A stretch of 36,395 bases of DNA from Octopus sinensis (GCF_006345805.1 NW_021833124.1:1-36395); one strand, 5' to 3'; numbered from the stretch's first letter, positions 3,984-4,584 are shown. Notes: generated by a model not told the origin, from the letters alone. Program-made: numbers and translations.

Positions 3984-4584
3984 GGGCGGCGAGCTGGCGG
4001 AATCGTTAGCACGCCGGGCGAAATGCTTAGCGGTATTTCGTCTGCTGTTACGTTGTGAGTTCAAATTCCGCCGAGGTCGACTTTGCCTTTCATCCTTTCG
4101 GGGTCGATAAATTAAGTACCAGTTAAGCACTGGGGTCGATATAATCGACTTAATCCGTTTGTCTGTCCATGTTTGTCCCCTCTATGTTCAGCCCCTTGTG
4201 GGTAATAAAGAAATAGGTATTTCGTCTGCTGTTACGTTCTGAGTTCAAATTCCGCCTAGGTCGACTTTGCCTTTCATCCTTTCGGGGTCGACAAATTAAG
4301 TACCAGTTACGCACTGGGGTCGATATAATCGACTTAATCCGTTTGTCTGTCCTTGTTTGTCCTCTCTGTGTTTAACCCCTTGTGGGTAGTAAAGAAATAG
4401 GTATTTCGTCTGCTGTTACGTTCTGAGTTCAAATTCCGCCGAGATCGACTTTGCCTTTCATCCTTTCGGGGTCGATAAATTAAGTACCACTTACGCACTG
4501 GGGGTCGATGTAATCGACTTAATCCGTTTGTCTGTCCTTGTTTGTCCTCTCTGTGTTTAGCCCCTTGTGGGTAGTAAAGAAATA
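3984..4584 (+). mobile_element. S2-family tRNA-derived SINE, trimeric (184-bp period), Tx1-like tail, 16-bp TSD
   Basis: Head TGGCGGAATCGTTAG...GAGTTCAAATTCC. Units restart at GGTATTTCGTC at 4032, 4216 and 4400. TSD TGTATATTTAATATAT at 3965-3980 and 4585-4600. Confidence 0.93.

What the first reader, a model, noticed from the sequence alone, without database searches (positions are those of the whole stretch)
4140..4215. A tRNA-SINE subfamily shares its last ~50 nt with the Tx1 LINE but does not use its target
Seen: the SINE tail TTTGTCCCCTCTATGTTCAGCCCCTTGTGGGTAATAAAGAAA aligns with the LINE ends TTTGTCCCCTCTGTGTTCAGCCCTGTTTGGCCAATAAAGGAA (35228-35277; 22/23 identity in the core) and TTTGTTCTATCTGTGTGCAGCCCTGTGTGGCTAATAAAGAAA (reverse complement of 18298-18345). 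Other S2 copies (6163, 29644, 32010-32395) have the same head and core but an unrelated tail. Known: SINEs borrow LINE 3' ends, most often from CR1/L2/RTE clades, whereas L1-type partners are usually recognised through poly(A). Inference: this is a tail-dependent Tx1-SINE pair formed by tail capture. Puzzle: the Tx1-tailed SINEs have 15-16 bp TSDs at non-TATC sites, so either they escape targeting, use a non-specific sister LINE, or the LINE took its tail from the SINE.
Basis: partly seen in the sequence, partly recalled or inferred. Interest (0 to 1): 0.8.

Follow-up and report, generated by a model that had tools for sequence, protein, structure and literature searches.

The report
Octopod SINE borrows L1/Tx1-like LINE tail
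A short mobile element in an octopus-like genome ends with the same roughly 45-base tail as a family of L1/Tx1-type long mobile elements, an ordinary copy-the-tail partnership seen here with an unusual partner; its failure to land in the LINEs' TATC-repeat target is best explained by a sister LINE, seen in Argonauta hians, that has the same tail but no fixed target.

Summary
The last 42-49 nt of the SINE (4172-4213; also 4843-4889 minus) align with the 3' ends of two LINE copies (35236-35277; 18300-18348 minus) at 81-83% identity. The local score is 26-28, against 8±1.5 (maximum 18) for 20,000 shuffles.

Both LINE copies lie inside (TATC)n arrays. Both SINE insertions have 15-16 bp TSDs at other sequences.

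The LINE is L1-like: APE, RT, zf-RVT and a CCHC ORF1, with human L1 ORF2p as the best solved relative. Tx1 clade membership could not be tested for lack of references.

Loci from Argonauta hians show the tail is an old feature of an octopod LINE group (55-68% aa identity). That group includes (TATC)n-associated and (ATT)n-associated members. It also includes a nearly intact member with a 15-bp TSD at an ordinary AT-rich site. Six co-resident SINE copies match this last LINE best, over 65-70 nt, and none lies in a microsatellite.

The puzzle is therefore best resolved by a non-specific sister LINE, although none was seen in the window's own genome.

The "unrelated" tails of the other SINE copies share the terminal 4-bp hairpin (CUUGU loop) with compensatory stem changes.

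This is a new member of a known kind and moderately interesting.

The parts
3984..4215 (+). SINE subfamily A ('Tx1-tailed' S2), full copy: box A-like motif about 3995-4005, box B-like motif about 4057-4069, core, then tail 4156-4215 ending ...GGGTAATAAAGAAATA with no poly(A)
4216..4584 (+). Two head-less 184/185-bp tandem units of the same SINE (SINE positions 49 to end), lying inside the same TSD as the full copy
3965..3980 (+). 5' TSD of the array, TGTATATTTAATATAT (16 bp); the 3' copy is at 4585-4600
4585..4600 (+). 3' TSD of the array
4841..5074 (-). Second independent subfamily-A SINE insertion, flanked by the 15-bp TSD ATATCGCGGTTCACC (4826-4840 and 5075-5089)
4191..4203 (+). Tail hairpin GCCC-CUUGU-GGGU, followed by AAUAAAGAAAUA
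18298..24501 (-). LINE A, about 6.2 kb, apparently full length but degenerate. ORF1 pieces include a CCHC knuckle (22808-23224). ORF2 is split into APE (21080-22138), RT (19522-21045) and zf-RVT/C-terminus (18711-19664). 3' tail 18298-18348 with hairpin AGCC-CUGUGU-GGCU (18310-18323)
17849..18297 (-). (TATC)n array directly 3' of LINE A, about 115 units
24502..24615 (-). (TATC)n array directly 5' of LINE A
35026..35287 (+). LINE B, a 5'-truncated copy (3' UTR only) of a related family, 72% identical to the LINE A 3' UTR. Tail hairpin GCC-CUGUUU-GGC at 35255-35266; ends ...AATAAAGGAAGTTATACAAC
34957..34976 (+). (TCTA)5 upstream of LINE B
35288..35381 (+). (TATC)17 and degenerate units directly 3' of LINE B
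32186..32405 (+). SINE subfamily B (same head and core, other tail ...CCCCCAAAATTTCGGGCCTTGTGCCAAGAATAGAAAAAAAA). Further copies at 32009-32170 (+), 6150-6391 (-), 5950-6128 (-) and 29637-29790 (+)
24335..24357 (-). Hairpin motif in the LINE A 5' UTR (UUGCCC-CUUGU-GGGCAA, then an A-rich stretch), about 60 nt before the ORF1 ATG; resembles subfamily-B SINE tails

Best explanation
The element at 3984-4215 (with its tandem units, and the copy at 4841-5074) is a short non-coding retroposon. Its last 45-60 nt were taken from the 3' UTR end of an octopod group of L1/Tx1-like LINEs.

Shown: the tail is homologous and co-terminal in the SINE and the LINEs. It is conserved across several LINE lineages, seen in the window, in Argonauta hians and on one metagenome contig of unknown host. 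LINE members differ in where they land: in (TATC)n, next to (ATT)n, or at ordinary sites with a 15-bp TSD. SINE copies in the window and in A. hians land at ordinary sites with 13-16 bp TSDs.

Inferred mechanism: the SINE RNA presents the LINE's recognition module. This module is a pyrimidine-rich stretch, a 4-bp hairpin with a CUUGU loop, AAUAAAG, and a short defined end without poly(A). ORF2p (endonuclease plus reverse transcriptase) of a non-site-specific member of the LINE group binds it in trans. It starts target-primed reverse transcription exactly at the tail end. Staggered nicks then give the TSD of about 15 bp.

The two LINE copies in the window belong to (TATC)n-specific sister families that keep the same ancestral tail. 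This is why the SINE resembles them without sharing their target.
For: Tail match and its significance.

LINE anatomy and L1-type affinity.

Three independent (TATC)n-embedded LINE insertions:
- Window LINE A and LINE B.
- A. hians L010, where the tail is followed by (TCTA)14 and the 5' side by (CATC)4.

(ATT)n-followed member, L002.

Non-specific member, L001 6886-12652:
- Perfect 15-bp TSD TTTTTAAAATTTGTA.
- Intact ORF1, and ORF2 with a single in-frame stop.

SINEs in A. hians:
- Six SINE copies homologous to the window SINE over body and tail (query 76-231), all ending GAGAAATCTAT at non-repeat flanks. Two were checked and have TSDs of about 13 bp.
- Their tails match the non-specific LINE at 55/65 to 55/70 (score 34-37.5), against 21-24 for the TATC-type LINE of the same genome.
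- The window SINE-A tail matches the A. hians SINE tail at 46/56.

Hairpin:
- 88% of cells are paired, against 75.5±2.8% in shuffles and 7-48% in slid controls.
- GC/CG swaps occur at two stem positions.
- RNAalifold independently predicts just this helix.
- It appears in the MFE fold of 5 of 6 tails.

No poly(A) at any LINE or SINE end.
Against: - No non-specific LINE of this group was found in the window itself.
- Within that genome the SINE-A tail is closer to the TATC-associated LINE A/B (score 26-29.5) than to the A. hians non-specific LINE (21-24.5). The partner in this species is therefore inferred across species.
- The full-length non-specific LINE with a clear TSD is a single example. 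A second LINE fragment in A. hians, L001b, has short copies that add only flank evidence.
- RT identities (55-68%) do not resolve a clean split between targeted and untargeted lineages.
- The hairpin is only 4 bp. Its predicted energy is no better than shuffles (z from -1.1 to +0.4). The compensatory changes trace to perhaps 2-3 events among related sequences.
- Tx1 clade membership is unproven.
Confidence: 0.6

Rival explanations
1. The (TATC)n-associated LINEs themselves mobilise the SINE. Target choice would lie not in the endonuclease but in the template RNA. LINE RNAs end in (UAUC)n, which anneals to nicked TATC arrays. The SINE RNA ends in ...GAAAUA without the repeat, so it integrates wherever the enzyme nicks.
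For: - In the window's genome the closest tails to SINE-A are those of LINE A and LINE B: 21-22 of 23 in the pyrimidine core, scores 26-29.5.
- The tails differ mainly in the last few bases: GAAAUA in the SINE, GAAACAUA(UCUA)n or (UAUC)n in the TATC-associated LINEs, and GAAAUCUA with one unit in the untargeted LINE.
- No untargeted LINE was seen in the window.
Against: - In related target-specific LINEs the endonuclease is held to be the main determinant of target choice (as stated in PMC4494074, citing Takahashi and Fujiwara 2002).
- LINE A is degenerate, with ORF2 in three pieces. LINE B is a 250-bp stump only 72% identical to it. The two SINE-A insertions are 90-92% alike.
- In A. hians, where both LINE kinds are seen, the SINE tails clearly follow the untargeted LINE.
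Confidence: 0.15
2. The LINEs acquired their 3' end from the SINE, for example by template switching onto SINE RNA during reverse transcription. The shared tail would then be of SINE origin.
For: - Template switching and head-to-tail SINE joins evidently occur here: the tandem units at 3984-4584 and SINE pairs at 32009-32405 and L001 14913-15312.
- Direction cannot be read from a pairwise match alone.
Against: - The tail module is present in at least four LINE lineages of 55-68% aa identity, seen in the window, in A. hians and on one metagenome contig of unknown host, with different terminal repeats and targets.
- In the LINEs the AATAAA inside the tail is kept intact, as expected for a Pol II polyadenylation signal. 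In A. hians SINEs it has drifted to AATAGA.
- The SINE body occurs with at least two different tail versions, the usual sign that the SINE is the borrower.
Confidence: 0.05
3. The similarity is chance or a compositional effect of pyrimidine-rich, A-rich 3' ends.
For: The tails are of low complexity: T/C-rich followed by A-rich.
Against: - 0 of 20,000 dinucleotide shuffles reach the score (z about 13), and no other 60-mer in the window exceeds 15.
- The match is co-terminal in all elements.
- It recurs, more strongly, between the SINE and the LINE in A. hians, at 55/65.
Confidence: 0.01

Closest known systems
Stringent-type SINE/LINE pairs with a common 3' tail (eel UnaSINE1/UnaL2, L2 clade; Kajikawa and Okada 2002; hairpin structure in PMC1636434)
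   Same: The SINE and the LINE share the last 45-65 nt. A small conserved hairpin lies near the 3' end. There is no dependence on poly(A). The SINE is a composite of head, body and a borrowed tail.
   Different: The partner here is L1/Tx1-like, not L2. There is no (TGTAA)n-type terminal repeat on the SINE. The hairpin has only 4 bp and its function is untested.
L1-clade LINEs with stringent tails in plants and algae (maize/sorghum LINE1-1_ZM group with SINEs; Chlamydomonas L1-1_CR/SINEX-3_CR; Ohshima 2012, PMC3472496)
   Same: An L1-superfamily LINE shares a conserved, hairpin-forming 3' end with SINEs, with compensatory stem changes. This is a rare exception to poly(A)-based 'relaxed' L1 recognition: only 3 of 58 tail pairs listed in that survey were L1-clade.
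   Different: Those pairs are in plants or green algae and end in poly(A). This one is in an animal, has no poly(A), and belongs to a group that also contains microsatellite-targeting members.
Tx1-Mar LINEs and SINEU in crocodilians (Kojima 2015, PMC4494074)
   Same: A SINE proposed to be mobilised by Tx1-type LINEs.
   Different: In that case the partnership is inferred from a shared insertion target (Mariner-N4_AMi) and shared snRNA-derived 5' heads, and the SINEs end in poly(A). Here the link is a shared 3' tail, and the SINE does not share the target of the targeted LINEs.
Microsatellite-specific Tx1-clade LINEs (Kibi (TC)n, Koshi (TTC)n; crocodilian families in (TTCC)n/(TTTC)n; Kojima and Fujiwara 2004, as cited in PMC4494074)
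   Same: L1/Tx1-like LINE copies embedded in a single microsatellite type with the repeat on both sides (window LINE A, LINE B; A. hians L010).
   Different: The repeat here is (TATC)n, and (ATT)n for L002; I did not find either listed in the papers read. Close relatives with the same tail are untargeted.
CORE-SINEs with exchangeable LINE tails (MIR and relatives; octopus OR2 of Ohshima and Okada 1994 is listed as a CORE-SINE in PMC4758252; tRNA-Core is a main octopus SINE class in PMC8967140)
   Same: One head and body is combined with alternative LINE-derived tails (subfamilies A and B here). It is abundant in octopods.
   Different: Identity with OR2 or with the CORE domain was not tested, because no reference sequence was available. 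The known CORE-SINE tails recalled from general knowledge are L2, CR1 and RTE types, not L1/Tx1.

Membership tests
SINE/LINE pair with a shared 3' tail (stringent type) | Similarity confined to, and co-terminal at, the 3' ends of a SINE and a LINE of the same genome, beyond chance | tested here: met
   window; A. hians, 55/65-55/70.
SINE/LINE pair with a shared 3' tail (stringent type) | Conserved stem-loop in the shared tail | tested here: inconclusive
   A 4-bp hairpin is paired in 88% of cells against 75.5% in shuffles, with GC/CG swaps at 2 pairs. RNAalifold predicts it. Folding energies are not better than shuffles, and only a few independent events underlie the swaps.
SINE/LINE pair with a shared 3' tail (stringent type) | The tail is required for trans-mobilisation by the LINE proteins | not testable with these tools
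   Needs a retrotransposition assay.
SINE/LINE pair with a shared 3' tail (stringent type) | The SINE and its partner LINE produce the same kind of integration site | tested here: met
   SINE TSDs are 15-16 bp in the window and about 13 bp in A. hians. The untargeted LINE L001 has a 15-bp TSD. This is not met for the TATC-embedded LINE A and LINE B.
Tx1 clade of non-LTR retrotransposons | ORF2 with an N-terminal APE endonuclease, an L1-type RT and a C-terminal zinc-binding region | tested here: met
   Pfam finds Exo_endo_phos, RVT_1 and zf-RVT. The best solved relatives are human L1 ORF2p (3e-34, against R2 at 1e-20) and the L1 endonuclease.
Tx1 clade of non-LTR retrotransposons | RT phylogeny places the element with Tx1 rather than L1 proper | not testable with these tools
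   No named Tx1 or L1 reference set was available, and the homology hits are unnamed. Indirect support: L1-Tx1 is the only L1-superfamily label in the list of recently active LINE families of Octopus vulgaris (PMC13282606).
Tx1 clade of non-LTR retrotransposons | Sequence-specific insertion into a repeated target | tested here: met
   LINE A, LINE B and L010 sit in (TATC)n, and L002 is followed by (ATT)n. This is not met by L001, which has a TSD at a unique AT-rich site.
Tx1 clade of non-LTR retrotransposons | ORF1 with a CCHC knuckle rather than the vertebrate L1 ORF1 (Transposase_22) fold | tested here: met
   Only zf-CCHC is found, weakly (E 7e-4 and 4e-3), with no Transposase_22 hit at E<=0.1. 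That Tx1 ORF1 carries CCHC motifs is recalled from general knowledge, not tested.
tRNA-derived SINE (SINE2) | The 5' head is recognisable as a tRNA | tested here: not met
   ARAGORN finds no tRNA at default settings and only inconsistent calls at relaxed thresholds. Rfam finds no tRNA hit even at E<=10. Box A-like (TGGCGGAATCG) and box B-like (GAGTTCAAATTCC) motifs are visible in the sequence.
tRNA-derived SINE (SINE2) | Short, non-coding, multi-copy, flanked by TSDs | tested here: met
CORE-SINE superfamily | A central CORE domain homologous to that of MIR or OR2 | not tested
This is a lead only, from PMC4758252 and PMC8967140.

The most novel reading that the evidence does not exclude
The microsatellite-embedded LINEs and the SINE use one and the same protein machinery. 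The integration site would then be dictated by the last few bases of the template RNA rather than by the endonuclease: (UAUC)n, (AUU)n, a single UCUA, or none. An L1/Tx1-type element could be retargeted simply by changing its terminal repeat. The second hairpin in the LINE 5' UTR, which resembles the subfamily-B SINE tails, would be part of the same recognition system.
Probability: 0.12. Interest if true: 0.8.

Novelty: new member of a known kind. Interest (0 to 1): 0.45.

Why it matters
SINEs are among the largest repeat classes of octopus genomes (PMC8967140, PMC13282606), and I found no paper naming the LINE that moves them. This finding points to an L1/Tx1-like LINE group as the partner of one SINE family that is shared between the window's species and Argonauta hians.

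It adds an animal example to the very few L1-superfamily LINEs that appear to recognise a specific 3' tail rather than poly(A); only 3 of 58 tail pairs in Ohshima 2012 were L1-clade, and all three were in plants or an alga.

It also offers a compact natural series of close relatives with one tail but different landing sites: (TATC)n, (ATT)n, or none. On such a series one could test whether the endonuclease or the RNA end sets the target.

Tried and rejected
- Public DNA scans. Scans for the tail pattern CCCTTGTGGSYARTAN{1,2}AGAAAT found nothing in viral contigs. In metagenome contigs they found six hits, all chance matches in microbial-looking sequence.
- Exact-protein look-ups. The window's APE ORF is not on record, so the source assembly could not be fetched. 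P0129 is also not on record. L011 (P0121) ends 113 nt after the stop codon, too short to reach the tail. L003, at 41-47% aa identity, lacks the tail.
- tRNA detection. ARAGORN and Rfam gave nothing at normal thresholds.
- Extended lower stem. A stem pairing UCUNUGU with AUANAGA appears in several single-sequence folds. It is not recovered by RNAalifold and its energy is not better than shuffles, so I do not claim it.
- (TATC)n as the tail of the neighbouring SINE. I considered that the (TATC)n 5' of LINE A might be the tail of the neighbouring S1 SINE (24617-25040, minus strand). This is rejected, because nine S1 copies show that the family ends in (TAAAAGAG)n.
- Two LINEs in L010. I first took the two L010 LINE copies for two insertions. 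They share the same downstream flank and are one segmental duplication, so they count once.
- SINEBase consensus sequences (OR1, OR2, OK). No supplementary files are held. The Albertin 2015 paper is not held.
- Targeted versus untargeted clade. Pairwise RT identities (55-68%) do not resolve such a split.

Full report
**What is at the coordinates**

The window is AT-rich, microsatellite-rich DNA full of short retroposons. It comes from a cephalopod. The best protein match of its LINE reverse transcriptase is an Argonauta hians protein at 63% identity, and cuttlefish proteins also appear.

At 3984-4215 (+) lies a 232-bp SINE. It has box A-like and box B-like motifs, a core, and a tail ending ...GGGTAATAAAGAAATA with no poly(A). 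It is followed directly by two head-less 184/185-bp units of itself (4216-4399, 4400-4584). The whole three-unit array is bracketed by one 16-bp TSD, TGTATATTTAATATAT (3965-3980 and 4585-4600).

A second, independent copy lies on the minus strand at 4841-5074, with the 15-bp TSD ATATCGCGGTTCACC.

Other copies with the same head and core carry a different tail...CCCCAAAATTTCGGGCCTTGTGCCTAGAATAGAAA. I call these subfamily B. They lie at 32009-32170, 32186-32405, 6150-6391 (-), 5950-6128 (-) and 29637-29790.

**Is the match real?**

Yes. A blastn search of the SINE against the window hits, besides SINE copies, only two places. Both are LINE 3' termini: 35236-35277 (83% over 42 nt) and 18341-18300 (81%).

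Local alignment gives 35/42 and 34/42, and 40/49 for the second SINE copy against LINE A.

The last 50 nt of the SINE score 28 and 26 against the LINE ends. In 20,000 dinucleotide-preserving shuffles the mean is about 8, the sd about 1.5 and the maximum 18. No other 60-mer of the window on either strand exceeds 15.

**The LINEs**

LINE A (18298-24501, minus strand) is about 6.2 kb.
- Its ORF1 pieces include a CCHC knuckle.
- Its ORF2 is broken into an APE endonuclease piece, an RT piece and a zf-RVT/C-terminal piece.
- The RT is closest among solved structures to human L1 ORF2p (3e-34, against 1e-20 for R2). The endonuclease is closest to the L1 endonuclease.
- (TATC)n abuts both ends: 24502-24615 on the 5' side and about 115 units at 17849-18297 on the 3' side.

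LINE B (35026-35287) is a 5'-truncated stump, 72% identical to the LINE A 3' UTR. It has (TCTA)5 upstream and (TATC)17 downstream.

The 5' array of LINE A is not the tail of the neighbouring S1 SINE, because that family ends in (TAAAAGAG)n.

These are therefore L1-superfamily LINEs embedded in one microsatellite type, the behaviour described for Tx1-clade families such as Kibi and Koshi (PMC4494074). I could not run a clade phylogeny, so 'Tx1' remains likely but unproven.

**Related loci**

Look-ups of homologous proteins gave DNA from Argonauta hians and from one metagenome contig.

- L001 (A. hians) holds a 5.77-kb LINE (6886-12652), 62% aa identical to LINE A. It has an intact 476-aa ORF1, an ORF2 with a single in-frame stop, and a perfect 15-bp TSD, TTTTTAAAATTTGTA, at an ordinary AT-rich site. 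There is no microsatellite. Its tail is ...TGTGTCGGCCCTTGTGGCTAATAAAGAAATCTA.
- The same 22 kb holds six SINE copies homologous to the window SINE over body and tail (query 76-231). All end in ...GGCCCTTGTGGCTAATAGAGAAATCTAT at non-repeat flanks. The two copies checked have TSDs of about 13 bp.
- L010 (A. hians) holds a LINE whose tail...GCGCCCTTGTGGCTAATAAAGAAACATA, is followed by (TCTA)14 and whose 5' side abuts (CATC)4. This is a third independent TATC-type insertion. The second copy in that locus is a segmental duplicate.
- L002 (a metagenome contig) has ...GGGCCCTTGTGGCCAATAAAAGAAATC followed by (ATT)n to the contig end.
- A more distant LINE, L003 (41-47% aa identity), lacks the tail.
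- The tail-bearing lineages are 55-68% identical to one another.

**Which LINE goes with the SINE?**

In A. hians the SINE tails match the untargeted LINE over 65-70 nt (55/65 and 55/70; scores 34-37.5). They match the TATC-type LINE of the same genome only at scores 21-24.

The window's SINE-A tail is homologous to the A. hians SINE tail (46/56). This fits a body-plus-tail combination older than the split of the two octopods, although that is an inference from one alignment.

Within the window, however, the closest LINE tails are those of the TATC-embedded LINE A and LINE B (26-29.5, against 21-24.5 for the A. hians untargeted LINE). No other LINE coding fragment of this group is present in the window.

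All 8 SINE insertions with this tail (2 in the window, 6 in A. hians) lie outside microsatellites. All 3 TATC-type LINE insertions lie inside (TATC)n.

The simplest reading is that the SINE is driven by an untargeted member of the group, and that LINE A and LINE B are targeted cousins which keep the ancestral tail.

The option 'escape from targeting' cannot be excluded. In that reading the RNA end, not the endonuclease, sets the site. I give it about 0.15.

'LINE took the tail from the SINE' is unlikely. The tail is spread over several LINE lineages, and AATAAA is kept intact in the LINEs, where it can act as a polyadenylation signal. It has drifted to AATAGA in the A. hians SINEs.

**The tail module**

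All the tails contain a 4-bp hairpin, in most with a CUUGU loop, placed just before the A-rich stretch (AAUAAAG in the LINEs and SINE-A; AAUAGAG, AAGAAUAG and similar in the others). The stems are:
- SINE-A: GCCC/GGGU.
- LINE A: AGCC/GGCU, with loop CUGUGU.
- LINE B: GCC/GGC.
- A. hians LINE (L001) and L002: GGCC/GGCU and GGCC/GGCC.
- SINE-B: GGGC/GCCU and AGGC/GCCU.

On 21 tails, 88% of cells pair, against 75.5±2.8% in shuffles and 7-48% when the partner is slid. GC/CG swaps occur at two stem positions, in 7 cells. RNAalifold on 15 tails predicts exactly this helix and nothing else. It appears in 5 of 6 single-sequence MFE folds, but the folding energies are no better than shuffles.

The evidence is suggestive rather than strong, because the helix is short and the swaps trace to a few lineages.

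It does show that the subfamily-B tails are not 'unrelated'. They differ in the 30 nt before the hairpin but share the terminal module.

No element has poly(A). The ends are defined:
- GAAAUA in SINE-A.
- GAAAUCUA(U) in the A. hians SINEs and the untargeted LINE.
- GAAACAUA(UCUA)n in the TATC type.
- GAAAUC(AUU)n in L002.

This is the signature of tail-specific ('stringent') priming rather than L1-style poly(A) priming.

**Comparison with what is known**

Tail sharing between SINEs and LINEs is classic (Ohshima and Okada; the eel UnaL2 hairpin, PMC1636434). For the L1 superfamily it is rare. A 2012 survey found 58 pairs, of which only three had L1-clade tails, all in plants or a green alga (PMC3472496).

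A Tx1-SINE partnership has been proposed once, for crocodilian SINEU and Tx1-Mar. That proposal rests on a shared target and shared 5' heads, and those SINEs have poly(A) tails (PMC4494074).

Surveys of mollusc SINE partners report other clades. In bivalves four LINE lineages are reported, with no mention of Tx1 (PMC11481361). The octopus repeat papers I could read do not name SINE partners (PMC8967140, PMC13282606, PMC9115989).

I could not consult Repbase or Dfam, so the pair may already be implicit in curated libraries.

**Verdict**

This is a new member of a known kind, a stringent SINE/LINE tail pair with an uncommon partner clade and a useful natural series of targeted and untargeted relatives. 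Interest is moderate, at 0.45.

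Noticed in passing
window 3984-4584 (also 32009-32405; L001 14913-15312): SINE copies occur as head-to-tail arrays inside a single TSD. Here there is one full copy plus two 184-bp units that restart at SINE position 49. Unit 1 has six private differences from units 2 and 3 and from the independent copy at 4841-5074 (u2-u3 96.2%, u1-u2 94.6%). 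This hints at template switching between different SINE RNAs at insertion, or at later unequal exchange.
   Followed up: partly
window 24335-24357 (-); L010 13375-13400; L001 about 7040-7060: Each LINE of this group has a second hairpin motif in its 5' UTR, 40-70 nt before the ORF1 ATG (UUGCCC-CUUGU-GGGCAA plus an A-rich run in LINE A). Subfamily-B SINE tails align with the LINE A motif over about 44 nt. For three of the four tails 4-5 of 2,000 shuffles reach the score, and for the fourth none does. The meaning is unknown.
   Followed up: partly
window 24617-25040 (-) and at least 13 other places (e.g. 5323-5718, 25654-26069, 29153-29565): A second, more abundant SINE of about 420 bp (the 'S1' family), with its own tRNA-like-looking head and a (TAAAAGAG)n tail. 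It is absent from 43 kb of A. hians sequence. Its LINE partner was not sought.
   Followed up: partly
L001 6886-12652: The A. hians untargeted LINE is nearly intact (ORF1 of 476 aa; ORF2 interrupted by one in-frame stop at 9869-9871) and has a perfect 15-bp TSD, so it looks recently active.
   Followed up: yes
L001 217-1285 (-) and short copies at 5125-5241, 13886-13993, 14231-14338, 1944-2018: A further LINE fragment has its own version of the tail (...GTGTGGGCCYTTRTGGCCGATNNAGAAAT). Four short, variably 5'-truncated copies of its 3' UTR all lie at non-microsatellite flanks.
   Followed up: partly
L002 2020-2105: A LINE of the same group on a JGI metagenome contig (sample 3300045642) is followed by at least 28 units of (ATT)n, suggesting another microsatellite target. 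The 5' side is not on the contig.
   Followed up: no
window 10614-12086: A 92-bp satellite of 16 copies, 98% identical.
   Followed up: no
window 13588-13626: An interstitial run of the TTAGGG telomere-type repeat (6.8 units).
   Followed up: no
protein P0129: A 466-aa protein 61% identical to the A. hians LINE ORF2 is deposited as a 'Herbaspirillum sp.' MAG protein. It is probably animal LINE DNA binned into a bacterial MAG.
   Followed up: no
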